A model generated the notes under the pieces. The model had not been told where the DNA came from, ran no database searches, and was given only the letters and a program-made list of their open reading frames with translations. This document shows, piece after piece, positions 36,135 to 62,109 of a stretch of DNA of 64,000 nucleotides. The number at the start of each line of letters is the position of its first letter. Position 1 is the stretch's first letter. Both the position numbers and the translations under genes were made by a program. The stretch is from Hyaloraphidium curvatum SAG 235-1 (Eukaryota > Fungi > Monoblepharomycota), in assembly GCA_025558095.1 (NCBI GenBank), contig JAIVFI010000017.1, positions 1-64,000 of the forward strand, given 5' to 3'.

Positions 36135-38288
36135 ATGCGCCCGCCCCTGCGCGCCTTGTTCGCGCCGATACCGCCCCCGCGACCCCCATGTTCCCGCTGC
36201 TTTGCTGCGGCGGCGCGCGCGGGAACGGGATCGTCGCTGCCGGGGCGCCCGTCTCCGCCTCGGGGTCCGCGGGAACCGGCGGAACCGCGTCGGCCGGCCC
36301 GGCGGGACGGGCATGCCGGCGCCAAACGGACTACGCCCGCGGGACGTTCCCCCGATCGGGGCGCCCTATTGGGCTTCCGTTCGGCCGTCGGCGCCGCGGT
36401 TTCCGGCAGGACGGACGCCCGCGGATCCGCCGACGCCGTGTGGGCGGCGTACCGCGCCCTCGGCTCGGCACGCGGGCTCACGGGGGACGACGTGAAGAAC
36501 GCGGTGCGGTACCTCGCGGGACATGCGGTCGCGGGGCGGTCCGGGGCGCGCGGGGACGGGGGGGCGGCCGACGAGGCGGCGGGGAGGGCGAGATGGGTGC
36601 TCGTGGATGCGGCGGCGGCGGGGATCGGGATACCGGACAAGGCCGTGGCGTGGTTCGTGCAGATCAGCGATCGCCGCCTGGGGTGGGTTTGGAAGCCGTC
36701 GACGTCGGGCCGCATGCCAATGATCCCGACGCATGACAGCACCTACGCCGCGTGCCGCGACCTGCGCGACTTTCTCCTTTCCGAGTGCGGCGTGCCCATG
36801 AGCGCGAAGCTCCTCTCCGGCCTGCTCCGCAACGTTGCCCACGGCGGCAACTACACCGCCTTCCTCAAACTGCTCCACGAGTCCCTCCCCGACATCGCGT
36901 CCGGGGACGTCGACTCGTACCTGGTCAACATGTTCGTCAAGGCCGTCGCCACGGCCTCGCCGCGGGCCGCGGAGGACCTGGAGGGATACCCTTCCCGGCA
37001 GAACCTGGTAGCGGATCTGGCTGTGCCCCTCTGGGCCATCGACGGGGACCGCGGCGCGCTGCGGAGCCGCATGCCGAGGCAAGACCGCGAGGAGCTGCAG
37101 AAAGACGCGGACACCTCGCTGCGCCGCGCGGTCCTCGAGGGCCGCGCCCCCCGGCTCGCTGACTTGTGCGCGCCCGGCATGCCCCCCGGCTCCACCGCTC
37201 CCGTGGACAAGATCGCGCAGATCCTGTGCTTCTCCGCCTCCCGCTTCCGCCAAGGGCATCACCGCATCGTCGATGGGCAAACCCCCAGCGCGGCCGTCGA
37301 GGCCTTCTGCGCGTGGCGGCGCCGCGGCCTCGCCCGCGCCGCGCTGGAGCTCCTCCTGGGCGACCCCTTCCGCATCCCGCCCGGTCGGGCGCAGTTCTCC
37401 GTGCTGATCGCCGGCGCGGCCCGCGACCGGGACGCGGCGGGCGGCGGGGAGCTGCTTTCGCGGATGGCGGAGCTCGGCGTCGCGCCGAACCGGGAGGTGT
37501 ACAACGCGGTCATCGGCCTGCATGCGCGGACGGGGATGCTGGACCGCGCGGCGGGGACGGTGGCGGAGATGCGCGCCGCGGGGTACCCGCCCGACTCGAC
37601 CACCGGGATGGTGCTGCTGGACGGCGTGCTCGTTCCCGGATCCGACGGCCGCGCCGCCAAGGCCGCCATGCGGACGCTCTCGCGGGCGGGGATCGGGGTC
37701 AGAGCCTCGCACTGGAACAAGGCGCTGCACCATTTCGCCCGCGCGGGCCGGCTGGAGGACATGGAGGAGGTCCTGGCCGCCATGGAGCCCGGGTGGGACG
37801 AGGTCACCGTTGCCACCTGCTCGCGGGCCTACTCGCGGTCCGGGCGCGCCGACCGGCTGCTGAGGTTCCTCCGCCGCGCGCCCGCGGGGACGCTGTCCAA
37901 CGGGGCGACCTGGAGCGCCGCGGTGCTGTGCTTTCTGCGGCAGCACGGCGACGAGCCCCACGAATCCCGGTTCCGCGGGTACGCCCACGCGCTCTGCTGC
38001 GCCGTGCTGGACGGCACCCCAGTCGATCGCCCGTCCCTCCCCCCGGAATCGGGCGGGTTCCCCTTCCTGGACGTCCCCCCGCCGCCGACCAAGCCCGGGC
38101 TGCTGCTGGTCGTGTTCGACTGCATGCACCGCGGGTTCGCAGGGCAGCGCAGAGCGGCGCTCGAGGAGAAGGGGAGGGCGTTCCTCGTGAGGGAGGGGTA
38201 CCCGCAGGCCGCGGGGATGGGGGCGGAGGAGATGCACGCGATGCTGGAGCGGTCGGGGGGGGTGCGGCCGCGGGAGGCGGATGGGTGA
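36135..38288 (+). CDS. PPR protein copy 1, putatively mitochondrial
   Basis: Arg-rich, acid-poor N-terminus; 35-aa repeats such as REVYNAVIGLHARTGMLDRAAGTVAEMRAAGYPPD; family-conserved intron at about 36682-36739. Confidence 0.88.
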   Translation: MRPPLRALFAPIPPPRPPCSRCFAAAARAGTGSSLPGRPSPPRGPREPAEPRRPARRDGHAGAKRTTPAGRSPDRGALLGFRSAVGAAVSGRTDARGSADAVWAAYRALGSARGLTGDDVKNAVRYLAGHAVAGRSGARGDGGAADEAAGRARWVLVDAAAAGIGIPDKAVAWFVQISDRRLGWVWKPSTSGRMPMIPTHDSTYAACRDLRDFLLSECGVPMSAKLLSGLLRNVAHGGNYTAFLKLLHESLPDIASGDVDSYLVNMFVKAVATASPRAAEDLEGYPSRQNLVADLAVPLWAIDGDRGALRSRMPRQDREELQKDADTSLRRAVLEGRAPRLADLCAPGMPPGSTAPVDKIAQILCFSASRFRQGHHRIVDGQTPSAAVEAFCAWRRRGLARAALELLLGDPFRIPPGRAQFSVLIAGAARDRDAAGGGELLSRMAELGVAPNREVYNAVIGLHARTGMLDRAAGTVAEMRAAGYPPDSTTGMVLLDGVLVPGSDGRAAKAAMRTLSRAGIGVRASHWNKALHHFARAGRLEDMEEVLAAMEPGWDEVTVATCSRAYSRSGRADRLLRFLRRAPAGTLSNGATWSAAVLCFLRQHGDEPHESRFRGYAHALCCAVLDGTPVDRPSLPPESGGFPFLDVPPPPTKPGLLLVVFDCMHRGFAGQRRAALEEKGRAFLVREGYPQAAGMGAEEMHAMLERSGGVRPREADG

Positions 38289-38457
38289 GAGGGTCAAGGG
38301 GTGCAATCTCGACAACGAAGCAGAACGTCTTTTGTCCTCTTCCGTTCTTTCGATCTTCTGTTTATTTCCAACGCCTGCCAAGCCACTACGAGGGGGTGAG
38401 GCGGTGCGGCACGCGTCGGCGCGACGCGACCAGTAAACAACCACCCGCCGCGTTGGG

Positions 38458-40570
38458 ATGCACGCCCTCGCGCGGTCCTGCCGGGCCGTGCCCGCCCGGC
38501 TCCCGCGACCCGTGCTTCCCGGAGCCCCGCACGCCGCGGCCGCGTCTTCCGGGCCGAGAAGGAGGGCCGCGCCCGCCCCGCCGAAACCGGCCCGGCCGTC
38601 GCCGCCACCGTTCGCCGCGATTTCCGCACGGCCGACGTTGCGGGCGGCGGATCCCGTGGAGCGCCTGCGGGAGGCCATCGAACACGCCAAGGCCGCGCCG
38701 TTCCGCGTGGGCGCGGACCTCGTCTGGGACGCCTACCGCGCACTCGGATCGGCCGCGGGCCTGACCGCGGACGACGTGCGGGAAGCGGCCCTGCAGATCT
38801 GCGCGCGGCCGGTGGGGGAGTTCGGGACGGTCCAGCGCGGGCCAGGGGAGAAGGCAAAGGCACAGAGCCGCGCGGGCCCGCTGGTCGCGGAGGCGGGCAG
38901 GAGGATGCGGCGGCTGCTCACCGACGCCGCGGAAAGCGGGATCGTGGTCGACAAGAAGACCGCCATGTGGTTCATCCAGGCGAACGAGAAGCAATTGGTG
39001 TGGGTGCCACCTCCGCGGTGTCCCGCCGCGCCGCTGAACCGGCCGTCGCGACGGCAGATCCTACGCGGTGTGCCGGAACTTGATGGACTTTTTGCGGTCA
39101 GACTGCCGCGTGGCGTTTGACGTGCGGCACCTCAATACCCTCGTGACCACCGTGGCGCACGGGGGCAACTACACCGCGTTCCTGAAGCTCCTGCACGACT
39201 GCCGGACGGCCGATGCCATCTCGGCCATGGACGTATACACCGTCAGATTGTTCTTGAAAGCCATCGCCAAGGCCGCGGCCAATCCCGCGGCGTGCGAGGA
39301 TCTGGAAGGGTACCCCAGCCGCAAGACCAGCGTTGCGGACCTCGACACACGGGCCGCTCGGGACCCGCTGGAATCCGAACCCGAACCGGAAGCCGCCCTG
39401 CGCGCCGCCATCCTAAACGGTCCCGAGGTGCAGGCGTCGGACCTGTACGCCCCGGGAATGCCCCCGGGCTCGACGACGCCGGTACGCAAGGTCATCCAGC
39501 TCCTCTCTTTCGTCGCGGCCCGCCTCGAGGGACGACACGCCGACCTCGTCAACAACCACATCACCACCGGCGTCATCGAGGCCTTCCTCAACGCGGGCCA
39601 CCCCCGGCTCGCCCGCGCCTCGGTCGAGGTGCTCGCAGGCGAACCCTTCCGCATCGCACCCGATGCCGCGCACTTCAACTTCCTCCTCAAGGACGCGGTC
39701 GAGCGCGGCGACGACCGCGCGGCCGATCGGCTGGTGTGGCGGTGGCGCGAGGCGGGCGTGCGGCCCGACCGGCAGCTGTTCAACACCACGATCGGGTTCT
39801 ACGCGCGCGCGGGGCGGGTCGACGAGGCCCGCGAGACGCTGAAGGAGATGAAGGCCGCGGGCATCGCGCCGGACGAGCTGACGGGCTCGCACCTCCTGGA
39901 CGGCATCCTCGCGCCGGGGATCACGGTCAAGGACGTGGAGCTCTCCCTGGGCTGGCTCGCCGTCAACGGGATCGAAATCACCCCCAAGCACCAGATCAAG
40001 GCCCTGCGGCACTTTGCCGAGCTCGGGGACCTCGACAGCATGGAACGGATCTTCGCCGACCTGCCCGCGACGCCCAACTCGCACGCCGTCGCGACGTGCG
40101 CGGTCGCGTACGCCAAGCACGTGGACGACGAGCGGATGTTTGCATTCCTCGGCGGCGTCAAGAAGGTGCAGCTCCCGCGGTCGGAGACGTGGAGCGCCGC
40201 GATCCGGGCCCTCGCGCGGCGGTGGGCCAAAACCGGCGACGGCGAGGTCGGCGACCTCATCTTCGCGCTGATCAACGGCGTCTTCGACCGGAAGCCCGTG
40301 GATCCCGCCGCCGTCTCGCAGGGCAACCGGGACTTCGTGCTCCTGGGCTCGGAACCCCCCCGGCCGTTCCCCGAGTTCCTCCAGGGCATCTTCTCCATCG
40401 CCAGGAACAGTTTCACGGGGGATCGCCTGCGCATCCTCGAGGAGAAGGGCCGGGCGCACCTCGCCTCGGAGGGGTACAAGGTGACCCCGGACATGGGCGC
40501 GGCGGAGATGCTCGAGGCCGTGGAGCGGCATCCCCGCTTGCGTGGCCAAAGCGGTTCGGCCTCAGACTGA
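38458..40570 (+). CDS. PPR protein copy 2, putatively mitochondrial
   Basis: MHALARSCRAV..; intron at about 39000-39057; RQLFNTTIGFYARAGRVDEARETLKEMKAAGIAPD. Confidence 0.88.
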
Positions 40571-41387
40571 TCGTTTGGCTGCGTCGTGAAATAGATATGC
40601 CCTCCTTGCACATTTGGATGACCGTCCTGACGACCCGACGAGTCGATCCCGACTTTCCTGGGGACGACATCGATGGGCTTAGGAAACTCTAGATGGCTTC
40701 TGCACGCCAGCGCCAGCTGCTTACGGCGGCCTGGTACGCGGTGCAGAACCGGCGTCGCAACGCTGGATCAAGCTTTGCGTTCGCGGCAACGGCGGCGGCT
40801 CTGCTGGAGATTCTTGGAAAAGCCAGGACTCCGGGATCGGGCTCGCCGCAGGGTGCGGCCACGGCGGCCGGGCGGGCTGCCGGTGAGGTAAGTGGTCGGG
40901 TGGAGGCGGCTGCTCGATGGAAAGGTATTTTTCGGCGGGCAGGGCTTCGTGCTTTCGTTAGTCTTGCGTGAGCACCCCGGAGGCCGCGCCGTCGGATCCG
41001 CTGGCAGCGACCGGCCTGCCGTTCCGCCCAGAGCATGTGTGTGTTGCCTGTGATTTGGCTTGTGGATTCCAAGAAGTTGGGTGGTGGCAGCACGGACTCG
41101 AGTCAAAGATCACTACGATCGGTAGGCTCACCGATCTTCGATCGTATTCACTGCGCTCAAAACGGGTCCATCGGAGGCGAACGTGCGGATTCGTTGGTTC
41201 GCTGTCGTTCTATTCTTCAGTGGACCGGTGGGGCGGCGGGGCCTCGGGATGTGCGTTCCGCTGAGTGACTGCCCTCGTCGCGCCCGAACGAAGAACACAG
41301 TGTTACGTTTGCACGCAGCCAACACGGGAGCTAGAACTGGATCCTGAGTTGAATTGCCTACAGAGCATCTCGCCCCGCGGAGAACCA

Positions 41388-42510
41388 TCAACCCCGCCCA
41401 CGCGCGGCGGAAGGACGTCCGGCCCTTTTGGCATTGCGGCCGGAAACGCCCACCGACCGCACGAGCATACGGAGCATTCCCTCGGCGTCCATGTCGCGGG
41501 CTTCCGGGTAACCCTCCGCGACGAGGTACCCCGGCCCTTTTCTTCGAGGATCCGCAGGCGGTCGCCCCGGAATTTCGTCCGCATGCCTTCGAAGATTACC
41601 AGGAGCAGCCCCGGCATCGGCCGCGGCGGCGACATCCCCGCCAGCGGCAGGTCCCGCTTCCCGAGGGGCAACGCGGCGGCGTCGATCGGGACCCGATCGA
41701 GGACGGCGCAGCAGAGGAGCTTCAGGAACGCAGTGTAGTTGCCGCCGTGCGCCACATTGCGGACCAGGATGTTGAGGTGCCGCGCGGTCAGAGTTAGCCC
41801 GCACTCCAGCCGCAGGAAGTCCATCAGTTCTTTGCACGCCACATAGGAGCTGCCGACAATGGATCGAGGTCAGCGGCCACACGGAACGGGGGCCAAGGAG
41901 CGCGGGAACGAGGCACTCACACCAGAAGTCGGTCATTCACCTGGATGAACCAAGTAACAGCCTTCTCATCGATCGCAATGCCACCATTTTGCGCCGCATC
42001 GACAAGGAGGCGGCGCGTCCTGACCTTCGCCTCGTCGACGAGCTTCGCGGTCCGGCGCTGTGCCTCCGTGCCATCCTTTGGACCTCGCCGCAGTTTTCCC
42101 TGCTCTGCTATCGCGTGTGCGGTGAGAAAGTGGGCGATGCTTGCACCGTCGCCCGTCGTCAGGTCCTCGGCCGACCCGAGGGCGGCGTAGGCGTCCCAGA
42201 CCGCGTCTGCGGCCTTGGGGAGCGGGATCCGCCTCCGGCCGGCGCTCTCCAGGACCTTGCGCAGCCGCTCCAGCCCGGCATTCCTCTCAGGGGCAGACGA
42301 CGAGAACCGGGGCGCAGGAAGGTCGACCGCCGGCCGCGGCCGATGCTGCCGGGTTGCGGCGCTGGTCGCGTTCCGGGACGCGCTCGCCGCCGCGGACGCG
42401 CACCGCAAGGGCCGACCGGGACCCGCAAATGCAAGAGACGGTGCCGAAAGACGTTCCAAAGAGCGCCGGAGCGCGCTCAGGGCACGATCCGGGCGCTGGA
42501 AGCCGAGCAT
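41388..42510 (-). pseudogene. PPR copy 3: internal deletion of the whole PPR tract plus a frameshift
   Basis: NYTAFLKLL is fused directly to CCAVLDRVP at about 41714. A 1-nt deletion lies at about 41529 (GGCCGGGGTACC vs GGCCGGGCCTACC). Confidence 0.85.
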
Positions 42511-43068
42511 TGTTTCCTTGTTTGCAACACTTGGATCATCCTCACAACCTTTTTATGTAACGCGAACCCGGCGAGGGTTCGCTGGGTCCACTCGCGACGA
42601 CAGATGCCGATGATCTGCAGCGTCAGATTCGAGATCCATCGACGTCCATCACGTCATCCGCGCCGGGGCGTAGTGGCCCCCACGTTGATCGAAGCCAACC
42701 CTCTTCACCCGTGCGTGCAAATCAAAGGATCTGCCTTGAGGAACCAAAAAGCTCCCCAGCTACCGCCGCCCGCGGGTGTCAGTTGCCGTTGACGGTGTTG
42801 GCTCGAGCGGCACAAGAACGATGTGCGATAGGCGGCCCACAAGAACGCCTCCCGCAGCACCCGACAGAATAATGCGCGGAGCGGATGACCGCGGCCGCAA
42901 ACCCGGTCGAAACTTCGCCGTGAAGTGTACCGCGGCCCCGGAATCCGGTGGACGTGCACGGGATCGGCATTCCGCCCGTCACTCGCTTTCGCGCCACCTC
43001 ACTGCCCCGTACACACTCCTTCCGCCCCCCTCCCTTCCCCTCCTTCCGTCCCCCACACCAACGAAGAA

Positions 43069-43848
43069 ATGTCCCTCCCCACGCCTGCCCGCACCCCTCC
43101 CGGCCCCGGCCCGCTCCGCCCGGCCGCCTCCTCGCCCGCCGCGCGTGCCGGGGCGCACCCCTCCCCGGCGCCCACGCCCGCGCCGGCGAAGCAGCCTGCG
43201 CTGGGACTCATCGGGCTCACGCAGCCCGAGATGTTCAGGAAGGAGAGGGCCAAGAGGGAGAAGAAGCCCGCGGGCGAGGGCAAGGCCAAAAAGGCGCGGA
43301 AGGGCAAGGACGCGGAGGCCGGTTGCGGCACCAAAGCGAACGGAGACTCTGGCAAGGCACCGATCGGAGCGAACGAGGGGGACGTGGTCGAGGTCGAGGT
43401 CGTCGGCGGCAAGCTGGTCCCCGTGTTCGCGCCGCCGGCCCCCGCCAAGAAGCCCAAGCGCGCGGATTTGGCGCCCAAGAAGAAGCCCGAGCCGAACCTG
43501 TTCGTCGCCGTCGAGGCGCACGGCGGACAAGAGAGGGCGATCGGGTGCTTCAAGGACGAGGGGGCGGCGGTCTTGGCGTCCGGGGGACCCGAAAGAGGCG
43601 GATCTGTGCGCAAGCTCTCGGTTCCCGGGCTCGGGACCACCGTGGTGCTCGGGATCGCGTGGAACGAGGCCATGCGGGCGGTCAGGTTCGCTGCGGGGAC
43701 GAAGCAGGCGCTGGCCGAGGCCGCGGCGCGGGAGTGGAAGATGTCGCCGAGGCGGATCGTCTGGCTGGATGGGGACGCGAGGATCGACCATCCGAGCTCG
43801 CCGGGAAGGGCAGGGGTGGATCTGGAGGAGCACGAGGTGCGGGGGTGA
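43069..43848 (+). CDS. Hypothetical Lys/Pro-rich protein
   Basis: Intronless ORF with coding-like codon usage; no motif recognised. Confidence 0.6.
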   Translation: MSLPTPARTPPGPGPLRPAASSPAARAGAHPSPAPTPAPAKQPALGLIGLTQPEMFRKERAKREKKPAGEGKAKKARKGKDAEAGCGTKANGDSGKAPIGANEGDVVEVEVVGGKLVPVFAPPAPAKKPKRADLAPKKKPEPNLFVAVEAHGGQERAIGCFKDEGAAVLASGGPERGGSVRKLSVPGLGTTVVLGIAWNEAMRAVRFAAGTKQALAEAAAREWKMSPRRIVWLDGDARIDHPSSPGRAGVDLEEHEVRG

Positions 43849-44311
43849 GGGCCAGGAAGGGAAGGGGGGACAGACTGGACGGGCCGGAGTGGCCGCTGGG
43901 GGGGGATCGCGGCGCGGCCAGGCGGGGTGCGGCGGGGACGATCGGACGGCACTTTGGAAGCGATTTCTTCGGAGGAACATGTTGTCTGGCGGTTTCCGGT
44001 CGCCGATGGCCGACACAGCCCGCGCGTGACGGGCGGATGGCGTTGCGCAGGGCGCAAGCCCCCTAGCCGCCCGCCCCGTTCGGGCCTGCCCCACGCCTTC
44101 GGCATCAGGTGGCCCTCGATCCGGCTGTCTCACGCGAAGGTCCCGAGCGCCCCGTGGCCGCGGTTGCCGGTCCCGCCGTCGGGTTCAATATCCTAAATGG
44201 CTGCGGTCTAGGGACCCGGCGCCTAGAACGCGATCTCGCGATGCATGCGATCCCTTGCCCCCTGCCACATTGCCTGAACGAGGACACCGCTCCCCCGCGC
44301 CCCCGCCGACG

Positions 44312-46314: not shown

Positions 46315-46381
46315 GGAATTTTGGAGGAGGAGGATTCGACGGGTATTGCATCGGGGGCTTGGAAGCTTATCATGACTTATC

Positions 46382-46429
46382 AGTTCAAGTTTTGAAGAAG
46401 ATCGAAGTTCAAGTTTTGAAGAAGATCGA
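46382..46429 (+). repeat. Perfect 24-bp tandem duplication in the 3' UTR/intergenic region
   Basis: agttcaagttttgaagaagatcga x2. Confidence 0.95.
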
Positions 46430-46505
46430 AGGGGGAATCTTCAATGTGCGCTCGAAGCACATCATCCGTCCACCCCGACAACGAGAATGGTTGACCTGGT
46501 CCTGA

Positions 46506-48243: not shown

Positions 48244-48339
48244 TTCGGCGAACACGCGTGTCCTCGCGAGATGTGCTTGTCGAGACGATATCGTGATCGA
48301 CTCGCGATGGAATGGGTGGTGCATGCAAACAAGGAAACA

Positions 48340-50359
48340 ATGCTCGCCGTCCAGCGCCCGCATCGTGCCGTGAGCGCGCTCCGGCGCTCCTTCGGACGTG
48401 TTTCGGCACCGTCTCTTGCATTTGCGGGTCCCGGTCGGCCCTTGCGGTGCGCGTCCGCGGCGGCGAGCGCGTCCCGGAACGCGACAGGCGCCGCAACCCG
48501 GCAGCATCGGCCGCGGCCGGCGGTCGGCCTTCCTGCGCCCCGGTTCTCGTCGTCTGCCCCTGAGAGGAATGCCGAGCTGGAGCGGCTGCGCGAGGTCCTG
48601 GAGAGCGCCGACCGGAGGCGGATCCCGCTCGCCACGGCCGCATATGCGGTCTGGGACGCTTACACCGCCCTCGGATCGCCCGAGGGCCTGACCGGGGAGG
48701 ATGTGCGGGATGTCGCCCGCTTTCTCACCGCACACGCAATAGCGGAGCAGGGGAAACTGCGGCGAGGTCCAAAGGACCGGACCGAGGCCCAGCGCGGGAC
48801 CGCGAAGCTCGTCGACGAGGCGAACGTCAGGACGCGCCGCCTCCTTGTCGACGCTGCCCGAAAAGGTGGCATTGCGATCAACGAGAAGGCTGTTGTTTGG
48901 TTCATCCAGGTGAATGACCGACTTCTGGTGTGAGTGCTCCTTCCCGGCCTCCTTGGCCCCCGTTCCGTGTGGCCGCTGACCTCGATCCGTTCTCTGCAGC
49001 TCCTATGCGGCGTGCAAAGAACTGATGGCCACGTCTGAAGACCTGGAAGGCTATCCGAGGCGACAGACGAGCGTCGCGGATCTCGCTGTTCCTCTGTGGG
49101 CTTTAAACAAGGATGACCAAGCGATTCGGTCCCGTTCGGCAAAACGGGACGCTTTGGACCCGCTGGAAGTGGACCCGGACCCGGAAGCTGCACTGCGCGC
49201 GGCCATCCTGAGCGGTCCAGACCTGGGGATCACGGACCTCTGCGCCCCGGGTATGCCCCAGGGCTCGGTGACGCCGGTGCGCAAGGTTCTCCAGCTCCTG
49301 TCTTTTGCCGCCGCCCGCCATAGGCAGGGGCAGCGAGGCATCGTGGATACTTACACTTGTGCCGCCGCGGCCGAGGCTGCCAAAGCCTGGAACCATCCCC
49401 GGCTTGCCCGCGCCGTGGTCGAGGTCCTTTTGGGTGACCCTTTCGGCGTGTCTCCCAATGCGGCGCTCTTCAACATCCTCCTCGCGGAAGCTTCCGACGG
49501 GCGGGACTCTGAAGCCGGCGACGAGCTGCTCGCGCGGATGCGGCGGCTGCGTCTCGAACCACACCTCGACATGTTCAACACCATGATCCGCTTCTACGCG
49601 CGTACGGGAAGGCTCGGTCTGGCCCGCGACACCCTCAAGGAGATGGTGGCCGCGGGACACAAACAGGACGAGGTGACGGGGTTGGCCCTGCTGGAAGGCA
49701 TCCTCACTGCGGAGACCACGGTGGAGGACGTGATACGGACGATGGACTTGTTGGCAGAAGCGCGGATCGCGGTTACGTTCAAGCACTGGAACAAGGCCCT
49801 GCGCCACTTTGCCGACCAAGGAGACCTCCAAAGCATGGAACGTATTTGGAACGACTTGCCCGTTGCGCCGAACGAAACAACCGTCGCCACGTGTGCAAAC
49901 GCCTACGAGAAGTTCGGCAGCGCGGACCAGCTCCTTACCTTCCTTGACGGCGCGCCGAGGCAGTTGCTTTCGACGTCGGAGACGTGGAGCGCCGCAATCC
50001 GCGCGTTCGCCCGGCGGTGGACCGTCTCTCGGGACGAGGAGTTTGGTGATTTGGCCTTTGCCCTCTGCTGCGCCGTCCTCGATCGAGTCCCGATCGACGC
50101 CGCCGCGTTGCCCCTCGGGAAGCGGGATCTGCCGCTGGCGGGGATGTCGCCGCCGCGGCCGATGCCGGGGCTGCTCCTGGTAGTCTTCGAAGGCATGCGG
50201 ACGAGGTTTGAGGGCGACCGCCTGCGGATCCTCGAAGAAAAGGGCCGGGCCTACCTTGTCTCTGAGGGGCACTCGGTGGGCCCGGACATGGACGCCAAGG
50301 GGATGCACGAGATGCTGGACCGGTCCTTTGGCAACCACCGTCGCAGTGGACCGGGCTGA
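48340..50359 (+). CDS. PPR protein copy 4 (in-frame deletion of about 65 codons after ACKELM)
   Basis: Exon 1 is nearly identical to that of copy 3; same intron position; PPR tract intact. Confidence 0.85.
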
Positions 50360-50575
50360 TCGCCTGCGGATTCTCGACGAAAAGGGCCAGGCCTATACCT
50401 CGTCGCGGGAGTTACCCGGAAGCTCGGAACATGGACGCCACGGGAATGCTATGTTGCTCGAGCAATCGATAGGCAGTTGCGGCCGCAGTGTCAAACGGAT
50501 CGGACGTCCTTCCGGCGCGCATGGGCGGGGTTGATGGATTCTCCGCGGGGCGAGCATGCTCTGTAGACAATTCAG
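50358..50575 (+). pseudogene. Degenerate tandem remnant of a PPR 3' end plus 3' UTR
   Basis: gatcgcctgcggattctcgacgaaaaggg...gggcggggttgatggattctccgcggggcgagcatgctctgtag matches the 3' end and UTR of copy 3 (41350-41560, reverse strand). Confidence 0.85.
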
Positions 50576-52397: not shown

Positions 52398-53004
52398 GCT
52401 GACGCGGGCGGTGTCGCGTGCGGGCCGGCCGCCATAACGTCAGCTGCCCGATCGAGCCCGGGGCCAATCCGGGGCACAGCCCTTGCAGCACCGCCATGGG
52501 CCGACTCGACTCCCGACTCCCGGCCCCCCGGTCGGTTGGCAGTGCCGGCCGGACGACCGACCGGGCCTCCCACGGGACGTAACGGCGCTGCGTTGGGCTC
52601 GATTGCCAAGCAGATGGCCCAACGGATGCCCATCCGAGTGAGCCCGAGCGTCCCTAGTGGCTAACGGCATCCCGACGGGAGGCCGGCGGCTCGGGGCCTG
52701 GGCCGGGCGAATGACAAAACGGATCTTTCGGAACGCGGCGCGCGGGCCAAAACTCCAATAGACACCCGAACACACGGCATGAATTGCCAGCTCTTTTGGC
52801 CGGTCGCCTGATTGGGGCAATCCAGGGTCACGGAGTCGCGAAAGGGCCGACGAAGATTGAGCACCGCCCCGAGGCTCTTTTTTCGAATTTCCAGGGATTG
52901 CCGCCGAGTGACGTTGGGGCGGCCCAAGCGTCCCGGCATAAAAGGCGACGCCAAAAACCCACCGGCTCCATTCGCACACTTGCTCTCCATCGCCTGCCTC
53001 CGCC

Positions 53005-54531
53005 ATGCCGCAGCAACACCGCTCCGGCCGCGCGCTCCTCCTCGCCTGCGCCGCCGCGCTGCTCGCGCCGGCCGCCGCCGCGCCGCTCACTCCCCCCGGA
53101 CTCTTCACGGCGCAGCCCGGCCCACCCGCCGGCTCGCACGTCACCCACCCCTTCGCCTCGGGAGCCCAGTACGTCATCCTGAACAAGGCGCTCCTCGAGG
53201 ACGGCCCGTCGGTCATCGGCCTCAACGCGTTCGGCAAGCCCCTCCGCGGCGTGCGAAGGAGCAGCCAGGCGTCCAACGGCAAATTCGAGTGGTTCGGCTC
53301 GGTCGATGGCGCCGACTTGAGCAGCGCCGTCTTCGTCGGCTCGGCGGACGGAATCGCCGGCACCATTCGCACTTTGGACAAGGTGCGAAGTCGGAGTTGT
53401 TCGACGGCACACCCCGCTCACCCTAAGCTCTTTGTTGGCCAACAGGTCTACGAGGTCGCACCGGTCCACGGCGCCGTGCACGTCGTGTGGGAGATCGACC
53501 CCAACGCCTTCCCCGACGAGCTCCCTCCCAAGGCCGCACCCCCCGCACCCCGACTTTCGCTCGCCGCTCGCGGCTTGGAGGAACGCCAGACCTCCGGCAC
53601 CCCCGTCATCGATGTCCTCGTGGTCTACACCACCCAGGCCCGCATCGACGCGGGGAGTGACGCCAACATCCGCACCTCGGTCAACCTCGCCGTCACCGAG
53701 ACCAACGAGGCCTACCTGCAGAGCGGCGTGAACCAGCGGCTGCGCCTGGTCTACGCCGGCGAAGTCGCCTACACCACCGCCGGCTTCGACACGGACCTTG
53801 CCCGCCTGCAAAGCACCACGGACGGCTTCCTTGACGAGGTGCACGCCCTGCGCAACCAGTACGGCGCCGACCTCGTCTCCCTCATCATCACCGACACGGC
53901 CTACTGCGGCCTCGGCTACCTCAACGGCGGCGCCGACTGGGCCTTCACCGTCGTCAGCCGCACCTGCGCCACGGGCTACTACTCCTTCGGCCACGAGCTC
54001 GGGCACAACCAGGGTCTGATGCACGACCGCGCCAACGCCGGCGGGGGCTCGGGCGCGTACAGCTTCTCCTTCGGCTACCAGGACCCCAACAACCGGTTCA
54101 GGACCATCCTGGCGTACAACTGCCCGGTCGGCTGCCCCAGGCTCAAGTACTTCTCCAACCCCAACGTCCTCGAGCCGTCCTCCTCCGCACCCATGGGCGT
54201 CTCCTCCACTGCCGCGAACTCGGTTAGTTCGCTCCTCTCCCGCTCCAGGAGCATCCGGTCTGACCCCCTTGCCCCCTGCTTCCAGGCCGACAACGCGCAG
54301 TCCCTGAACCTCAACGCCGACGTCATCGCCGCCTTCCGCGCCGCCATCCCCCCGCCGCCCGTCGAAACCACCACTTCCCTGACTCGGACGTCGACGGCCA
54401 CCAAAACGCCCACAACCAGCGCGACCCGCACCGCGACGACGTCGCAGACCACCGCCACCAGGACGATGACCAGCAGCCGTTCGCGGACGGCTACCCCGAC
54501 GCGGACGACGACGACGAAGCGGAAGAAGTGA
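53005..54531 (+). CDS. Secreted bacterial-type reprolysin-like/peptidyl-Asp (M12B/M72-like) metalloprotease with a Thr-rich tail
   Basis: IDVLVVYT, LRNQYGADLV, CATGYYSFGHELGHNQGLMHD, FRTILAY, YFSNP; two probable in-frame introns. Confidence 0.88.
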   Translation: MPQQHRSGRALLLACAAALLAPAAAAPLTPPGLFTAQPGPPAGSHVTHPFASGAQYVILNKALLEDGPSVIGLNAFGKPLRGVRRSSQASNGKFEWFGSVDGADLSSAVFVGSADGIAGTIRTLDKVRSRSCSTAHPAHPKLFVGQQVYEVAPVHGAVHVVWEIDPNAFPDELPPKAAPPAPRLSLAARGLEERQTSGTPVIDVLVVYTTQARIDAGSDANIRTSVNLAVTETNEAYLQSGVNQRLRLVYAGEVAYTTAGFDTDLARLQSTTDGFLDEVHALRNQYGADLVSLIITDTAYCGLGYLNGGADWAFTVVSRTCATGYYSFGHELGHNQGLMHDRANAGGGSGAYSFSFGYQDPNNRFRTILAYNCPVGCPRLKYFSNPNVLEPSSSAPMGVSSTAANSVSSLLSRSRSIRSDPLAPCFQADNAQSLNLNADVIAAFRAAIPPPPVETTTSLTRTSTATKTPTTSATRTATTSQTTATRTMTSSRSRTATPTRTTTTKRKK

Positions 54532-54842
54532 TCGGAATGGGCGTCGAAAAGCGGACCTGTCTGGACTGTGCTGTACTTAATTCTCCGCGAAGAGAGCGCA
54601 TTGGACCTGCATCCGAAGTCCGCCTTGTCGCCGATTAGTCCACAGCCACGACATGAAGGCTCTCATTTGTGCTCGGCGAGGCCCGATAATGAAAGGAGGT
54701 GGGAGCAGACTCTGGAGAGGCAGAGCCTTGCGACTAAACATGCATAGATACGACACAGCAAGACAAAGGTACACGAAACAACAGCACAAGGGTATCAGAT
54801 GGCAGGCGGCTGGCGCTCCAGAGAACTCCATCCGTAGCCGAA

Positions 54843-55786
54843 TCAGTCGCTCTCGGTATCGGCCTCCTTGCCCCGACGCTTCCCGATCCGGGATGCAACG
54901 AGCCTGCCCACGCTCAGGGACCACCACCTGCCGGTGTTCTCCTGGTTCGACTCGATGTCGAGGTTGATCCGGGGCTGCGGCGTGGGGGTGACCGTCTGGA
55001 CCAGCAGTGAGCCTGAGCTTGGAGCGACAGCATCGGCATCCCAACCCACCAGAGTCGTCGTTGTCGGCACGGTCACGGTGGTGAGCCCCAGCGTAATGGT
55101 GCTCGTCAGCACGGTCCCGGTCTGGCAGCAGAACTTGGTAATGGTGCCGCTGTTGCCGCCATTGTTCCTCGCCTCGAGGGCGCGCGGCTCGGGGGTCAGG
55201 GTCGGGCACGCATCGCACGTATGGCGGCGGTGCAGCCCGTGCTGGTCGTGCACATGCACATCTGTCGTCGGCTCCGCGGTCGTCGGTGTCGGGCCATCCT
55301 CTGCGTCCGGGGCCCGCACGATGCTGGGCCGCAGCCGGAACAGCCCAGCCGCCCTGTCCAGCAGTCGCCGCAGCGGCACGGGGCTCACGGTGGTTGTCGT
55401 CGTCGTTCTGGTTATCGTGGTGCGCCGGGTGATCGTGACGATGAGGCTCCGGGTCGTGGTGGAGGTCGCGAAGTTGTTCGGCGCGCAGCAGCTGGGGGAC
55501 GGTGAATCGCCCGCCCTCGCGCCCGCGGCGGCCCCGGCAGACCCTCACCAGTTAATCGAGTTGGAGTATGAGCAGCCGGGACAGCTTTTGGGGCGGAGGC
55601 GGCGTCAGGCGCCGCGATTCGGGGCGACGGAGCGACGCACCAGGTCTCCGAAACAGCCGAATACGTGGTTGCCGTCGCGCCTCCTCCATCATTGTTCGCG
55701 GCCGCCGTCCGGAGGACCGCTAGTAGCGCAAAAAGGATGGCGAAGAGCAGAGGCCGGCCAGGCACGGCCCGTCGTCGGGGCGACAT
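54843..55786 (-). CDS. Secreted Cys/Thr-rich protein, multi-exon
   Basis: Signal peptide; spliced ETCCPGCSYSNSINCCCAP, Thr-rich strand, HRRHTCDACP..FCCQTG, Thr-rich strand. Confidence 0.65.
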
Positions 55787-55907
55787 GACTGCGGAGGAGT
55801 GGGGGATCGCTCAGCCGCCAACGGCACGCTCTGAGCCCTGAACACCTCGAGAGGAAGAAGACACACGAAGTCGTCTCTTAGCAATCCAACCACGCCAACA
55901 TGCGATG

Positions 55908-56010
55908 TCAGAGCTTGAGCTCCCGAACGTCCTTGCCCTCATCGTTTCCTTCCAGGCCTCAGAGCTTGAGCTCGCGAACGTCCTTGCCCTTCATCATTTC
56001 CTCCCACGCA
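55908..56010 (-). repeat. About 51-bp imperfect tandem duplication of the SDR C-terminus and stop codon
   Basis: tcagagcttgagctc(c/g)cgaacgtccttgccct(t)catc... occurs at 55908 and 55959. Confidence 0.9.
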
Positions 56011-56999
56011 TCCTGCCCCCGCTTGAAGTGCCGCCTCATGACCGGGTGCGACCCGGAAACGATGATGGTCTCGCCGTTGATGCTGTCGTCCTCGATCACC
56101 TTCATGAAGGTGTCCCTGGCGGCAGGTTCAGAAGGCGCTCGGTCATGCCCGCCCGCTCGGTACCCACACGACCTTCTCCAGCGGAGTCCACCCTCCCGCT
56201 GCCTTGATGTCCCTCCCGAACGCCGGGTCCGCTTCGACGTGCTGCGGAGTAGTCCACCGCCCGCCGCTGTTGTTCTTCCAGATGTCGGTGAAAGTGAACC
56301 CGACCGCGATGGTGTTGGCGCGGCAAACGCCCATACGCGCGTACGGGGAGCCGGTGAGCGTGCCCATTTCGGCAATCGTCGCAACCTGCGCGCTCATGGC
56401 GGCCTTGGTGATAACGTAGGTGGGGTCGGTGTGGGCAAGGAACTCGGAGACGGAACCGGTGTTGAGGATCAGGCCCGGGCGCTTGTTGCGGACCCAGTGG
56501 GTCAGGGCGATACGGGAGGCGAGCAGGGTCTGCGGGGAGATCAGCGACTGGCCGTCCGCGAAAGGCCCGGGTGACGGACCGAAGTCAGGTTGACGTTGAC
56601 CGTGTCCATCCAGGTGTCCTGGTCCTTCATGACGTCCGCGAGGTAGATGCCGCTGATTCCTGCGTTGTTCACGAGCACCCCATAGTCGCCGAACTTGTCC
56701 ATGGTCGCCTTGAAGAGGGCCCGAACCTCGTCCATCTTCCCCACCTGCGGCAACCCGCGTTACGCCTCCCTCGCGCAATACTGGGCAAACGCGGGCACAC
56801 TGACATCCGTCTTGACAAAGATGTAGTCTCCCTTCCGTCCGTATTGGTCCTCGAGCTTCTTGACGAGGTCCTGACCCGGCCCGACCGACCGGCCCGCGAG
56901 GACGAGCTTCGCGCCCTTCGACGCGAGACGCTCCGCCAAGGCCGCCCCGATTCCCATCGTGGCGCCTGTGATGATGAATATCTCGCCGTCGACCCTCAT
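55959..56999 (-). CDS. Short-chain dehydrogenase/reductase; 3 introns
   Basis: IITGATMGIG, LVNNAG, NTGS, YVITK. Confidence 0.92.
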
Positions 57000-57149
57000 G
57001 TCGAGCAGTTCGAGGAGGAAAACGTGGGACGGGAGACAGAACAATAAGTGTTCACTTTGGCGGCGGCGGTGTCGGCGGCCAAGTCAAGCCGCTCGCGTCG
57101 AATCGGCTTTTCTCACGAACCATTCACCCATCTGTCTGCCGCCGCGACA

Positions 57150-58927
57150 ATGGGAAACGTCTTTTCTTCTCAGGACCACCGTCGCGGTGGTGCCGACGAG
57201 GACCGCGGTCGCGCGGAGGCGCCGTCGCCTGCGCGACCAGACGCCCCGCAGGGAGCGCGCGGCGCGGAACCGGCGGCTCCTCTTCCGCGGCCGCAAAAGC
57301 AGGCGAAACTGGATCATTTCCTTGTCTACGAGCCGCGAAGGGCACCAGTGGAGGGGCCGGCGGGCTCTCTGCCTCCGGTTGCGGCTCGGGTCGGCAAGGA
57401 GGAGGACGTGGCGGTCGCCGAGCCCGTCCGCCTCCCGCCGGAGCTCCTCCATATCATTTTCGAGTGCGTCTCACTGCGAAAGATCTCACTGTGTCAATGA
57501 CGAAGACCGCCAGGTTCGCGCTGCCAAGGTGCTTGAAAAGCCTGGTGCCCGTCTGCCGCGCGGAATGCAAGTGCCACAAGTGCGACTGCTCCACCAAGTG
57601 CGCTGCCGCGCGGAAGCTGGCGATCAAGCTCTCCAAAGTCAACCGGTTCTTCCGCCGCGCCGTGGCTCCCAGGATCTACCAATGCGTTTCCTTGGCTCCC
57701 CCGCCGCCGACGCCGTACACGTACACGCCGACTCCGACAGGCGCTTCCGCCAAGATCGATAGGCTCCACCGGACTCTGGACCACTTTGGTGCCGCTCGGC
57801 TCGTGCGGAGCATCAGCTTCGAGCTCCGGCCCGCAGATCGCCAGCTAGGGCTGCCCAAGGCCGTGGAGATCGTGCGCGCCGCCACGCACCTGCGGTCGCT
57901 CGCCGTCTCGAGCTTCTTCTACGCTCACATCCCCGGCGACGGCATCCTCGAAGCCGCGAGGAGATGCAAGCACCTGCGGAGCCTCTCGTTGGAGGGCGTG
58001 AGCTTTTCGCAGGTGGCCCTGAGCCAGACGATCGAGGCGGCCGAAGAGCTCAAATCGCTCAGGTTCGCGGGCCTCGTCCCGTCCGGTCTCTTCACGGCGC
58101 TGGCGGATTCGGCTCCCAGCGGGCTGCTGGCGCTCTCGCTGGGCCCCTGGAGGAGCGCGGACGACGAGATGGAGGCGGACGTCGTCGCCTTCCTCGAGGA
58201 CGATCTTTTCAGCCTCATCACCTGGCGCATCAAGAGCCTGGCACGCCTCCAGATCCGTAACGCCGCACTGTTGAGCAACCAGGCCGTCGGCGCCGCGTTG
58301 GAGCGGTTCTCGGACCTGAAGTTCCTGGACCTCAGCTTCTGCCAGGGGGTCTCGAACGCGGCGCTGTCGAGGTTCACGGGGACGGGGCTCAAAGTGCTCC
58401 GCCTGGACGGGGTGCACCAGGTGACGGACGCGGGGTTGGTGCCGCTTCTGGACAGGAATCCGGGGTTGGTGGAGATCGATCTGTGCCAGACGGCGATCGG
58501 GGTGAGAAAGCAAGTTCCCGCTCTCATGCTGGTCCTCGGCCTAACCCGGAGCCCAAAACAGGCCGCGACACTCAAGAAGATTGGCGAAAAGTGCCACTCG
58601 TTGGTCGACCTGAACCTCTCGAGGACCAGCCTCTCGTCGGCCGCCCTCATCGAGTACCTCAAGGCCCCCCCGGCCCGGCTCAAGGTGCTCCGCCTCGCAC
58701 TCATCGGCGGCGTTAACGACGCGGTCGTGCGGCTCATCGCCAAGAAGCTCCCCAAGATCACCAAGCTGTCGCTGCTGGGCTGCAACGGGCTGCGGGACCC
58801 GGCCGAGAACCTGCTGCTGCTGGCTTACGCCCGGCGGAAAACGCTCGTCCAGATCGACATCGACGGCGTGAATGTGATCGACGACGACCTCGCTTTCGCT
58901 CTCGAAAGGATCCTCGAGCGCAGTTGA
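57150..58927 (+). CDS. F-box/LRR protein with an N-myristoylation-type start
   Basis: MGNVFS; RLPPELLHIIFE (intron 57464-57513); LRRs LKFLDLSFCQGVSN, LKVLRLDGVHQVTD, LVDLNLSRT. Confidence 0.88.
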
Positions 58928-59033
58928 GCATTGGAGCGATGGACGGGATCCGATTCCGCGCGGCAAAGCCGGAACACATGAACGAACAAAGACGGAGATG
59001 GGGGCCGAAACCCCGTGCTTGCTTGTTCTCGCA

Positions 59034-59756
59034 TCAATAGATCCACGGCACCATCCTCCACCTCCCCGCGGCGTGCGCGTCCCACTTCTCCGGCCCAAAG
59101 TGGTCCCTCAGCGTCCTCTCCTCGACCTCGATCCGCCTACTGGTGAAGTAGACCGCCGCAGCCAGCTGCAATCCCAGGTATAGCGGCCCCCGCTCGGCCA
59201 GCACCCCCGCGATCCGTTCCGCCAATACACGGGGATCACCCCGCGCCAGACCGAGCCGGATGGCCCATTCCGCAACGAGTCGCACCCAGCCCGTCCACAC
59301 CGTGCCCAGGAAGTAGGTCGAGCCCCCCAGCGCGGCGAGCCACAGCCCCGTATAAGAAGGGTGGAGAAGTAGGGCGTACGGGCCCGTGGACACGATCGTG
59401 TGACCTTCGCGGATGCCGACCTGATAGGTGAACAGCCGACCGAGCTCGGTTTTTGCCCAGAGCCGGAGAAGGCAGCCAGCGAGGCAGGCGGTGAAGGATG
59501 CAAAGACGAGGGAACGCGGCGGGGGCGGGCAGCGCGCCTTGGCCTCCACGTACAGGGCGAACACCCATATGGCGACGAGAAAATTCAAGGCAGGGAGCAG
59601 GGGGTGCAGGCCACGAAAGCCGAACACGAATCCGGCGTCGTGGACGACGCGGTCCCCTTCCGACGCGTCCAGCTGGTGCGGCGGCGTGGCGGAGCGCGAC
59701 AGGAGCAGCGCGAGCACGAGCGACGGAAGCTCCGACGCGTAACGCCGGAAATCCAT
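59034..59756 (-). CDS. Isoprenylcysteine carboxyl methyltransferase (ICMT/Ste14-like) family membrane protein
   Basis: LGRLFT..HTIVSTGPYALLLHPSYTG..RIEVEERTL..FG..W..RMVPWIY; multiple TM segments. Confidence 0.85.
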   Translation of the reverse strand: MDFRRYASELPSLVLALLLSRSATPPHQLDASEGDRVVHDAGFVFGFRGLHPLLPALNFLVAIWVFALYVEAKARCPPPPRSLVFASFTACLAGCLLRLWAKTELGRLFTYQVGIREGHTIVSTGPYALLLHPSYTGLWLAALGGSTYFLGTVWTGWVRLVAEWAIRLGLARGDPRVLAERIAGVLAERGPLYLGLQLAAAVYFTSRRIEVEERTLRDHFGPEKWDAHAAGRWRMVPWIY

Positions 59757-59856
59757 CGCGGGGGCCGGGGACAGCCGCGCCGGAAGAAACAGGGTCGAAC
59801 AGCTTGGACTTGTCCGACCGACGCGTCCGTTTGTTTATTGCGTGAGGTGTCCACAC

Positions 59857-62109
59857 ATGACCTCGCTCCTGGGGGCCCGACGCGGCCTGCTCCGCCCTCC
59901 TAGGCCCACATCTGTGTCCATTCTTGCCGGTCAGGTACCGTTTGCGGCGTTCTGGGACGGAAACAGCGTTGCAGCCTGCCTCCATGCTCCTCCAATTGCC
60001 ACGGCGGGGTTGGGCCCCACGGTGCGCCCTGGGAGGCCCAATGGCGGCCGCGGGGCGCGGTACTTCTCATCTCCTGCTCTTCCACCGGCCAACGGATTGG
60101 ACAATCTCCGCAGAGTGTTCGAACGCGCCCGCGGGAAGCGGATACCTCTCGCCCAGGCCGAGGACGCGGTCTGGGACGCCTACGCCGCACTCGGATCGAC
60201 CAAGGGCCTGACCGGGGAGGACGTGCGGGATGTAGCCCATTTCATCACAGCACACGCGATAGCGGAGCAGGCGAAGCTGCGGGCAGGTCCGGAAGGACGG
60301 ACCGAGGCCCAACGCCGGACCGCGAAGCTCGTCGACAAGGCGAACGTCAGGACGCGCCGTCTCCTTCTCGATGCGGCGCAAAAAGGTGGCATTGCGATCG
60401 ATGAGAAGGCTGTTACTTGGTTCATCCAGGTGAATGACCGACTTCTGGTGTGAGTGCCCCCTTGCCCGTTGGCCCCCGTTCCGTGTGGCCGCTGACCTCG
60501 ATCCATTGTCGGGAGCTCCTATGCGGCGTGCAAAGAACTGATGGACTTCCTGCGGCTGGAGTGCGGGCTAACTCTGACCGCGCGGCACCTCAACACCCTG
60601 GTCCGCAACGTGGCGCACAGGGGCAACTATACCGCGTTCCTGAAGCTCCTCCACGAGATCTTGACAGCAAACTTCATTCCGGTCATGGACGGCTACATCG
60701 TCAACTTGTTCCTGAAGGCCGTTGCCGAGGCCTCGCCGGCCGCGTCGGAAGACCTGGAAGGCTATGCTCGCCGGCAGACCATTGTCGCAGACCTTGCTGT
60801 TCCCATGTGGGCTTTGGACAAGGGGGACCCAGCGGTTCGGTCCCGTTCAGTACAACGGGATGCCTTGGACCCGCTGGAAGTGGAGCCGGACCCGGGAGCT
60901 GCACTGCGCGACGCCATCCTGAGCGGTCCAGACGTGAGAATCATGGACCTGTGCGCCCCGGGCATGCCACAGGGCTCGGTGACGCCGGTGCGCAAGGTTC
61001 TCCAGCTCCTGGCCTTTGCCGCGGCCCGCCATCGGGAGGGGCAGCGAGACATCGTGGACGCTTACACTTGTACCGTTGCGGCCGGGGCTGCCAACGCCTG
61101 GAACCACCGACGGCTTGCCCGCGCCGTGCTCGAGGTCCTTTCGGGGGAACCTTTCAGAGTGTCTCCCAATGCCACGCTCTTCAGCATCCTCCTCGCGGAA
61201 GCTTCCGACGGGCGGGACTCTCAAGCCGGCGAAAGGCTGCTCGCGCAGATGCGGCGCCTGCACGTGGAACCCGACAAGAAGCTGTTCACCGCCATGATCC
61301 ACTTCTATGCGCGTACTGGGAGGCTCGCTCTGGCCCGCGACACCCTCAAGGAGATGTTGGCCGCGGGACACAAACCGGACGGGGTGACGGGGATGGCCCT
61401 GCTGGAGGGCATCCTCACTGCGGAGACCACGGTGGGGGACGTGAAGCGGGCGATGGAACTGCTGTCGGAAGGGGGAATCCCGGTCACGATCATCCACTGG
61501 AGCAAGGCATTGCACTACTTCGCCGCCCGGAGGGACCTTCAAAGCATGGAACGTATCTGGAACGACATGCCCGTCGCGCCGAACGAAATAGCCGTCGCCA
61601 CCTGTGCAAACGCCTACGAGAAGTTCGGCAGCGCGGACCAGCTCCTTGCCTTCCTTGGCGGCACGCCGAGGCAGTTGCTTTCGACGTCGGAGACGTGGAG
61701 CGCCGCGATCCGCGCGTTCGCCCGGCGGGGGACCGTCTCTCGGGACGAGGAGTTTGCCCACCTGGCCTTTGTCCTCTGCTGCGCCGTCCTCGATCGGGTC
61801 CCGATCGACGCCGCCGCCCTGCCGCCCGGGAAGCGGGACCTGCCGCTGGCGGGGATCCCGCCGCCGCTGCCGCTGCCGGGGCTGCTCCTGGTAATCTTCG
61901 ACGGCATGCGGACGAGGTTGGGGGGCGACCGCCTACGCATCCTCGAGGACAAGGGCCGAGCCTACCTCGCCGGCGAAGGCTACTCCGGAACTGAAGGCAT
62001 GGGGGCCGAGGAGATGTACAGGATGCTGGGTCGGTCTGGAGGCGTGCGCCTGCGGTCCAGGAACGTCAACCGGGCCGGCGGGGTGGTCCGGGGTGGGTCG
62101 GAGAAGTGA
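59857..62109 (+). CDS. PPR protein copy 5, full length, putatively mitochondrial
   Basis: MTSLLGARRGLLRP.. presequence-like start; family intron at about 60450-60515; full PPR tract. Confidence 0.88.

What the first reader, a model, noticed from the sequence alone, without database searches (positions are those of the whole stretch)
36135..62109. Restorer-of-fertility-like PPR gene cluster in a fungus, varying at RNA-code positions
Seen: five paralogues (36135, 38458, 42510 reverse, 48340, 59857) share one intron position, presequence-like N-termini, and family-specific blocks (VWDAYxALGS, NVAHGGNYTAFLKLL, EDLEGY, DLCAPGMP, LEEKGRA). Copies 4 and 5 are otherwise very similar but differ at PPR positions 2, 5 and 35. 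Repeat A reads 5/35 = N/H in copy 4 and S/D in copy 5 (S/N in copy 1, N/D in copy 2). Repeat B reads N/D vs T/D. Repeat D position 5 reads N vs S. Established: positions 5 and 35 set base specificity (ND=U, TD/SD=G, SN=A), and clustered, fast-turnover PPRs with selection on these sites characterise plant Rf-like genes that suppress selfish mitochondrial ORFs. Inference: this may be an undescribed nuclear-mitochondrial surveillance or arms-race system in an early-diverging fungus.
Basis: partly seen in the sequence, partly recalled or inferred. Interest (0 to 1): 0.85.

Follow-up and report, generated by a model that had tools for sequence, protein, structure and literature searches.

The report
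Fast-turnover fungal mitochondrial PPR gene family
A little-studied aquatic fungus carries about 30 related genes for probable mitochondrial RNA-binding proteins that duplicate, swap pieces and decay, and change fastest at the positions that read RNA in plant relatives; this resembles plant fertility-restorer genes, but no target or arms race is shown.

Summary
The five copies are real PPR paralogues of Hyaloraphidium curvatum with one shared intron, and the quoted code residues are correct. Corrections: copy 3 has lost its main repeat tract, copy 4 lacks 65 codons, and copies 4 and 5 differ at 93 of 430 residues, only 10 at code sites. The cluster continues past the window (8 copies) and belongs to a family of about 32 loci, roughly 40% broken. 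There is a second young cluster at a telomere, a bias to contig ends (P about 3e-4) and mosaic gene conversion (P 0.002). In both young clusters, positions 2/5/last change about 2.7 times faster than the scaffold (dN/dS about 0.7 vs 0.25, permutation P 0.0002), also against surface controls. But dN/dS is not above 1, position 5 alone is not significant, and the weak M7/M8 signal lies elsewhere. The proteins have about 9-10 degenerate repeats, not 15-20. Verdict: an apparently undescribed fungal PPR family that evolves like Rf-like clusters but is not an RFL. Most likely mitochondrial RNA factors with relaxed specificity; arms race about 25%. The scan noted pieces of this family elsewhere in the same genome.

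The parts
36135..38288 (+). Copy 1, intact PPR gene; intron 36683-36739 (57 nt, in frame, no stop)
   Evidence: about 49% identical to copy 5 in exon 2
38458..40570 (+). Copy 2, intact PPR gene; intron 39000-39057
   Evidence: 53% identical to copy 5
41350..42510 (-). Copy 3, pseudogene: inverted duplicate of the copy 4 unit; intron 41920-41850; 1125-nt deletion at about 41715 (short CCTC microhomology) removes repeats P2-F; 1-nt frameshift near 41528
48340..50359 (+). Copy 4; intron 48930-48999; in-frame loss of 65 codons at about 49027 (repeat P1 and most of P2); function doubtful
50353..50574 (+). Decayed tandem duplicate of the 3' end of copy 4 plus flank; the flank is shared with copy 3
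   Evidence: self-BLAST 50212-50306 vs 50353-50449 and 41350-41570 vs 50351-50574
59857..62109 (+). Copy 5, intact, 728 aa (NCBI model DFJ74DRAFT_671669); present in the RNA-like run
59857..60075 (+). Presequence-like N-terminus of copy 5 ending in an R-x-F-S-S cleavage-type motif, kept in most copies of both clusters
   Evidence: no targeting predictor could be run
60450..60515 (+). Shared phase-2 intron, with a GAG instead of YAG acceptor in copy 5
   Evidence: joint 60449 to 60516 in run X1, which may come from a paralogue
60733..61056 (+). Family-specific insertion of about 108 aa between repeats P2 and P3 (EDLEGY and DLCAPGMP blocks); conserved, dN/dS about 0.22-0.36; no known relative
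61171..61584 (+). Core PPR repeats A-D of copy 5 (A 61171-61275, B 61276-61380, C 61381-61488, D 61489-61584); 5/last pairs SD, TD, MT, SN

Best explanation
A lineage-expanded family of P-type PPR proteins that are imported into mitochondria and bind mitochondrial transcripts to stabilise them or promote their translation, as fungal PPRs do. One branch of the family has seeded two young tandem clusters near contig or chromosome ends, where unequal recombination and ectopic gene conversion duplicate, shuffle and destroy copies. The helical scaffold stays under purifying selection. Redundancy frees the RNA-facing residues (2, 5, last, and also 1) to change at close to the neutral rate, giving a shifting repertoire of specificities from which an occasional variant may be kept when it fits a changed mitochondrial sequence. 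Shown: PPR fold, family size, clustering, pseudogenes, mosaicism, the site-class excess, and presence of copy 5 in an RNA-like run. Inferred: mitochondrial import, RNA binding, the targets, and that relaxation rather than conflict drives the excess.
For: Pfam PPR hits. AlphaFold model pLDDT 90.7 whose best matches are designed PPR-RNA complexes (Foldseek E 1.6e-9; VIA Z 20.8, rmsd 8.7, 352 aligned). Language-model neighbours are fungal mitochondrial PPRs such as Pet309 and Cia84. About 32 loci. Cleavage-type motif kept in divergent N-termini. M0 dN/dS 0.26-0.35. Code sites 0.68 (0.47-0.87) vs 0.25 (0.22-0.28) in intact copies only, P 0.0002. With a free synonymous rate, the non-synonymous rate is 0.80 vs 0.27 and the ratio does not differ from 1 (P 0.28). 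PHI-type test P 0.002 in both clusters. End bias P 3e-4. All S. pombe PPRs tested are mitochondrial (PMC3185421).
Against: A class average of 0.7 could hide a few positively selected sites among conserved ones. Position 5 mostly toggles among N, S and T in repeats P1, A, B and D, which suggests selected re-specification rather than free drift. Broken copies of the C3 cluster show the same excess. No localisation or binding data. About 30 genes is many for a small mitochondrial genome.
Confidence: 0.5

Rival explanations
1. RFL-like surveillance: the young clusters are a repertoire under diversifying selection that silences selfish mitochondrial ORFs, plasmids or mitoviruses.
For: Same genomic signature as rice and barley RFL clusters: clusters mixed with unrelated genes, chimeric genes, more similarity within than between clusters (PMC5075784). 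Excess at 2/5/last in two independent clades, also against polar, loop and outer-helix controls (P 0.0008 and 0.009). Nearly every copy has a different code string. Point estimates reach 1.1-1.3 for positions 2 and last in the C3 clade.
Against: No site class is significantly above 1. M1a/M2a is not significant (P 0.10-1.0), and the M7/M8 signal (P 0.02-0.03) falls on C-terminal and other non-code sites, where the synonymous rate is also raised 2.5-fold in the C17 clade. Position 5 alone P 0.12, whereas it is the main target in barley RFLs (PMC7380019). About 9-10 degenerate repeats vs 15-20 near-consensus ones. No selfish element identified. No sexual stage is known to me for this species (own knowledge).
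Confidence: 0.25
2. Neutral by-product: chromosome-end recombination amplifies one mitochondrial PPR gene, most copies are dispensable, and positions last/1/2 vary simply because they form a tolerant helix cap.
For: Strong end bias, with C3 and C5 copies within 5 kb of (TTAGG)n telomeres. Three of 8 C17 copies and 5 of 7 C3 copies are damaged. Position 1, not an accepted code site, is as fast as position 2. The excess is weakest at position 5.
Against: Neighbouring loop residues (0.32) and outer-surface residues (0.32) are not raised. The scaffold is under strong purifying selection in young copies. About 11 old lineages have stayed intact at 25-40% identity.
Confidence: 0.17
3. The family is a helical-repeat protein scaffold (for example a mitoribosome or respiratory-complex assembly factor, or a non-mitochondrial binder) and the code reading is irrelevant.
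For: Only repeats A and B reach Pfam cut-offs; repeats C, E and P3 carry non-code residues at position 5; a conserved unexplained insertion; atlas neighbours include complex I intermediate-associated proteins.
Against: N/S/T at position 5 and D/N at the last position are kept in most repeats; PPR-RNA complexes score well above TPR folds (Z 20.8 vs 13.0).
Confidence: 0.08

Closest known systems
Plant Restorer-of-fertility-like (RFL) P-class PPR genes (Fujii et al. 2011, as cited in PMC5075784 and PMC7380019)
   Same: P-type repeats with no catalytic domain, tandem clusters among unrelated genes, chimeric copies, pseudogenes, faster change at RNA-reading positions
   Different: Separate origin in a fungus; about 9-10 degenerate repeats vs 15-20 near-consensus; conserved intron; about 108-aa insertion; dN/dS not above 1; position 5 not the main target; no CMS-type target known
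Fungal mitochondrial PPR proteins (Pet309, Aep2, Dmr1/Ccm1, S. pombe Ppr1-8, Cia84-like)
   Same: Degenerate PPR solenoid with a presequence; nearest language-model neighbours; fast evolution and nuclear-mitochondrial co-evolution (PMC7430664)
   Different: Those form small sets of about ten distinct genes (nine in S. pombe, PMC3185421); this is one family of about 32 loci with birth-and-death clusters and no detectable full-length orthologue among them
Chlamydomonas NCL (NCC-like) OPR-RAP paralogues
   Same: A non-land-plant family of paralogous organellar helical-repeat RNA binders, where point changes retarget the protein (PMC8635915); clustered and fast-evolving (own knowledge, Boulouis et al. 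2015)
   Different: OPR repeats with a RAP domain, acting in the chloroplast; this family is PPR with no nuclease-like domain

Membership tests
PPR superfamily (P type) | Tandem helix-turn-helix repeats of about 35 aa matching PPR profiles | tested here: met
   PF13041 above cut-off in copies 1, 2, 4, 5; repeats of 32-37 aa
PPR superfamily (P type) | PPR-type solenoid fold | tested here: met
PPR superfamily (P type) | No E/DYW editing domain or PLS triplets | tested here: met
   no such Pfam hit in 18 members; C-terminus is helical
PPR superfamily (P type) | Sequence-specific RNA binding | not testable with these tools
   code-type residues present; no binding data
RFL | Member of the angiosperm RFL clade | tested here: not met
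   full-length homologues only in H. curvatum and one other fungus-like assembly; plant hits cover only the repeat core
RFL | 15-20 near-consensus P motifs | tested here: not met
   9 repeat units defined in exon 2, about one more across the intron; only two reach Pfam cut-offs (PMC5075784)
RFL | Essentially intronless coding sequence | tested here: not met
   one conserved intron in nearly all members (PMC5075784)
RFL | Clustered at few loci, more similar within than between clusters | tested here: met
   C17 (8 copies) and C3 (7 copies) form separate clades; 74-93% within the young clades, about 50% between
RFL | Chimeric copies from intra-cluster recombination | tested here: met
   PHI-type P 0.002 in both clusters; tracts with 0 differences beside tracts with 20-30 per 99 nt
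RFL | Diversifying selection (dN/dS above 1) at positions 5 and 35 | tested here: inconclusive
   raised about 2-2.7-fold over scaffold but 0.5-0.8 and not above 1; position 5 alone not significant; few sequences, low power
RFL | Mitochondrial localisation | tested here: inconclusive
   presequence-like composition and cleavage-type motif; the GC-rich genome favours Arg/Ala/Pro anyway; no predictor available
RFL | Variable gene content between strains or close species | not testable with these tools
   no second strain or close relative available
RFL | Suppression of a selfish mitochondrial ORF | not testable with these tools
   cox1 not found in the assembly, so mtDNA is not included

The most novel reading that the evidence does not exclude
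An independently evolved fungal counterpart of plant restorer clusters: a recombining PPR repertoire selected to silence selfish mitochondrial elements. It would arise in the Monoblepharidomycetes, the one fungal class whose sexual members have eggs and motile sperm (own knowledge), which is the condition for male-sterility-type cytonuclear conflict.
Probability: 0.25. Interest if true: 0.85.

Novelty: new variant of a known kind. Interest (0 to 1): 0.6.

Why it matters
The fungal PPR sets I could check in the literature are small (nine in S. pombe), and clustered, recombining organellar RNA-binder repertoires are known from flowering plants (RFL) and, as a paralogue family, Chlamydomonas (NCL). 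A fungal case would show that this evolutionary pattern recurs in a third lineage. Close paralogues that differ at a few RNA-facing residues are also a natural test of whether the PPR code works outside plants, which is still open (PMC7430664). I found no paper describing this family in the searched library.

Tried and rejected
Positive selection by M7/M8: nominally significant (P 0.024 in C17, 0.018-0.029 in C3) but rejected as support, because the top sites are C-terminal or non-code, M1a/M2a is not significant, M8a/M8 gives P 0.84 on all 13 sequences, and recombination inflates the test. Older splits are saturated at synonymous sites and uninformative. Target prediction was dropped: the mitochondrial genome is not in the assembly and only 3-5 repeats give readable codes. 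Spliced models were searched exon by exon by reference; I left the joined step out and used only full-length proteins that the tools returned. Metagenome scan found no relative. The organism of run SRR26194948 could not be named. Word-index searches found no further relatives, which is weak evidence. The insertion has no credible atlas match. The Bullerwell 2003 and Laforest 2004 papers were not held. The careful tree did not finish; the quick tree is quoted. MitoFates/TargetP and codeml were not available; the codon models are my own implementation (F3x4, naive empirical Bayes).
Full report
Identity. The window is the first 64 kb of a 732-kb contig in a 31.9-Mb, 55-contig genome. NCBI names the proteins as hypothetical proteins of Hyaloraphidium curvatum, a monoblepharid fungus with a linear mitochondrial genome (PMC6131824).

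Observation. Five paralogues lie at the stated starts and share one phase-2 intron. Three statements need correction. Copy 3 has lost 1125 nt covering repeats P2-F and carries a frameshift, so it is a pseudogene without two of the named blocks. Copy 4 lacks 65 codons including the NVAHGGNYTAFLKLL block. Copies 4 and 5 are 77% identical, with 93 differences in 430 residues, of which 10 are at 21 code sites. Copies 3 and 4 are an inverted duplication around three unrelated genes. Other genes between the copies encode a TPR protein, an M12B-like peptidase, an LRR protein and an ICMT-like protein.

Expression. The one public run holds contigs that match copy 5 with no differences over 349-478 nt, a joint that skips the intron exactly (60449 to 60516, GT..AG), and almost nothing in the intergenic bin after the gene. 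This fits transcription of copy 5. The joint itself may come from a paralogue, so use of the GAG acceptor is not proven, and the run's RNA status is a guess by the tool.

Family. Genome searches give about 32 loci: 8 on C17 (three beyond the window; copy 6 has a stop in exon 1), 7 on C3, and 17 more on ten other contigs. Roughly 40% are truncated, frameshifted or deleted. The C17 and C3 groups form separate clades inside a set of about 11 old intact lineages at 25-40% identity (quick tree). Twelve of 14 sites lie within 137 kb of a contig end (KS P about 3e-4). The C3 cluster ends about 1.3 kb from a (TTAGG)n telomere and the C5 copy about 4 kb from one. The left end of C17 has no telomere repeat in the assembly, so this cluster is near a contig end but not proven subtelomeric. 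A profile search of 1.84 billion representatives found full-length relatives only in H. curvatum (8 of the 10 looked up; two others were not looked up but match H. curvatum loci) and two intronless genes in an unnamed 53% GC, fungus-like assembly, SRR26194948. The family is therefore older than this species. Weaker relatives could be hidden below the 150 listed generic PPR hits.

Protein. AlphaFold gives a confident helical solenoid (pLDDT 90.7 for exon 2; 88.2 with exon 1). I defined nine repeat units in exon 2, interrupted by a conserved insertion of about 108 aa with no known relative. The best structural matches are designed PPR-RNA complexes, and the nearest language-model clusters are fungal mitochondrial PPRs. 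N-termini are Arg-rich and acid-poor, and most keep an R-x-F-S-S/A motif at about residue 65-70 while diverging elsewhere. That fits a matrix presequence with a peptidase site (own knowledge) but was not tested with a predictor.

Recombination. Both young clades are mosaics (PHI-type P 0.002, the floor of 500 permutations). Copies 4, 6 and 7 are identical across one 99-nt window in repeat A/B where copy 5 differs by 22 nt, while copies 5 and 6 are close in repeats C-D. Whole repeats are therefore exchanged between copies, as in rice RFL clusters (PMC5075784).

Selection. Gene-wide dN/dS is 0.26-0.35. With fixed site classes, positions 2/5/last give 0.68 in C17 and 0.98 in C3 against 0.25-0.28 for other repeat positions (permutation P 0.002 and 0.0002). 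The excess survives restriction to polar or non-buried columns, comparison with loop and outer-helix sites (0.32 each, P 0.009), dropping any one repeat, a tree-free count of variable columns (15/27 vs 75/249 and 19/27 vs 85/249), and use of intact copies only (0.68, interval 0.47-0.87, vs 0.25, P 0.0002; positions 5 and last alone 0.53, P 0.037). It is not positive selection in the strict sense: with a free synonymous rate the ratio is 0.78, not different from 1. Most of the signal comes from positions 2 and last, position 1 is as fast, and position 5 alone is not significant. M7/M8 is nominally significant but points to C-terminal and other non-code sites, and in C17 that region also has a 2.5-fold higher synonymous rate, which marks older conversion tracts. 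In barley RFLs position 5 is the major target and many genes reach very small P values (PMC7380019). My repeat boundaries and codon models are hand-made and the sample is ten sequences from one genome, so power is low.

Mechanism. Most likely (0.5) these are mitochondrial RNA stability or translation factors whose young, redundant copies keep the scaffold and let the RNA-facing edge drift, with conversion reshuffling repeats. An RFL-like surveillance role (0.25) predicts the same genomic pattern and is not excluded: position 5 toggles mainly among N, S and T, and nearly every copy has its own code string. Against it are the lack of dN/dS above 1, the short degenerate array, no identified selfish element, and evidence that fungal PPRs follow the plant code only loosely (PMC7430664). 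A purely neutral chromosome-end amplification (0.17) and a non-RNA scaffold role (0.08) are the other rivals.

Comparison and verdict. It evolves like an RFL cluster but fails three RFL membership tests (clade, repeat number, intron), with the selection test inconclusive. It is a PPR family. I found no description of it in the searched library. I rate it a new variant of a known kind, interest 0.6.

Limits. More genomic DNA could not be fetched, so intergenic parts of the other clusters were not read. Spliced models were searched exon by exon; the joined step was left out.

Noticed in passing
window:60450-60515: Intron of copy 5 ends in GAG instead of CAG; the NCBI model and a joint in run X1 use it, but the joint may derive from a paralogue.
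   Followed up: partly
L010:3830-3994 (G000:C3 right end): Telomere repeat is the 5-mer TTAGG; arrays of 95 nt or more were found only on one strand, at right ends of the contigs listed, and none at left ends.
   Followed up: partly
window:36683-36739: Intron of copy 1 is 57 nt, in frame and stop-free, so retention would give a protein with a 19-aa insert.
   Followed up: no
window:48243-48340 and 59756-59857: Copies 4 and 5 start about 100 bp head-to-head from a TPR gene and an ICMT-like gene; shared or captured promoters are possible.
   Followed up: no
L028:769-3021 (G000:C10 681-683 kb): A divergent family member lacks the shared intron, as do the two genes in SRR26194948; retroposition or intron gain in the rest of the family.
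   Followed up: no
L020:1-3720 (G000:C8 43-46 kb): Family member with a long extension that repeats its own C-terminal repeats (open frame over 1200 aa).
   Followed up: no
window:44255-46505: Multi-exon secreted-looking protein with a C-terminal hydrophobic segment and no Pfam hit in the part tested, inside the inverted duplication.
   Followed up: no
window:3809-6429: Short inverted duplications (4293-4833 vs 5351-5876, 68%; 3809-3927 vs 6311-6429, 89%) unrelated to the PPR genes.
   Followed up: no
G000:C2 411 kb and 421 kb, C18 302 kb: Other PPR genes outside this family with more canonical repeats.
   Followed up: no
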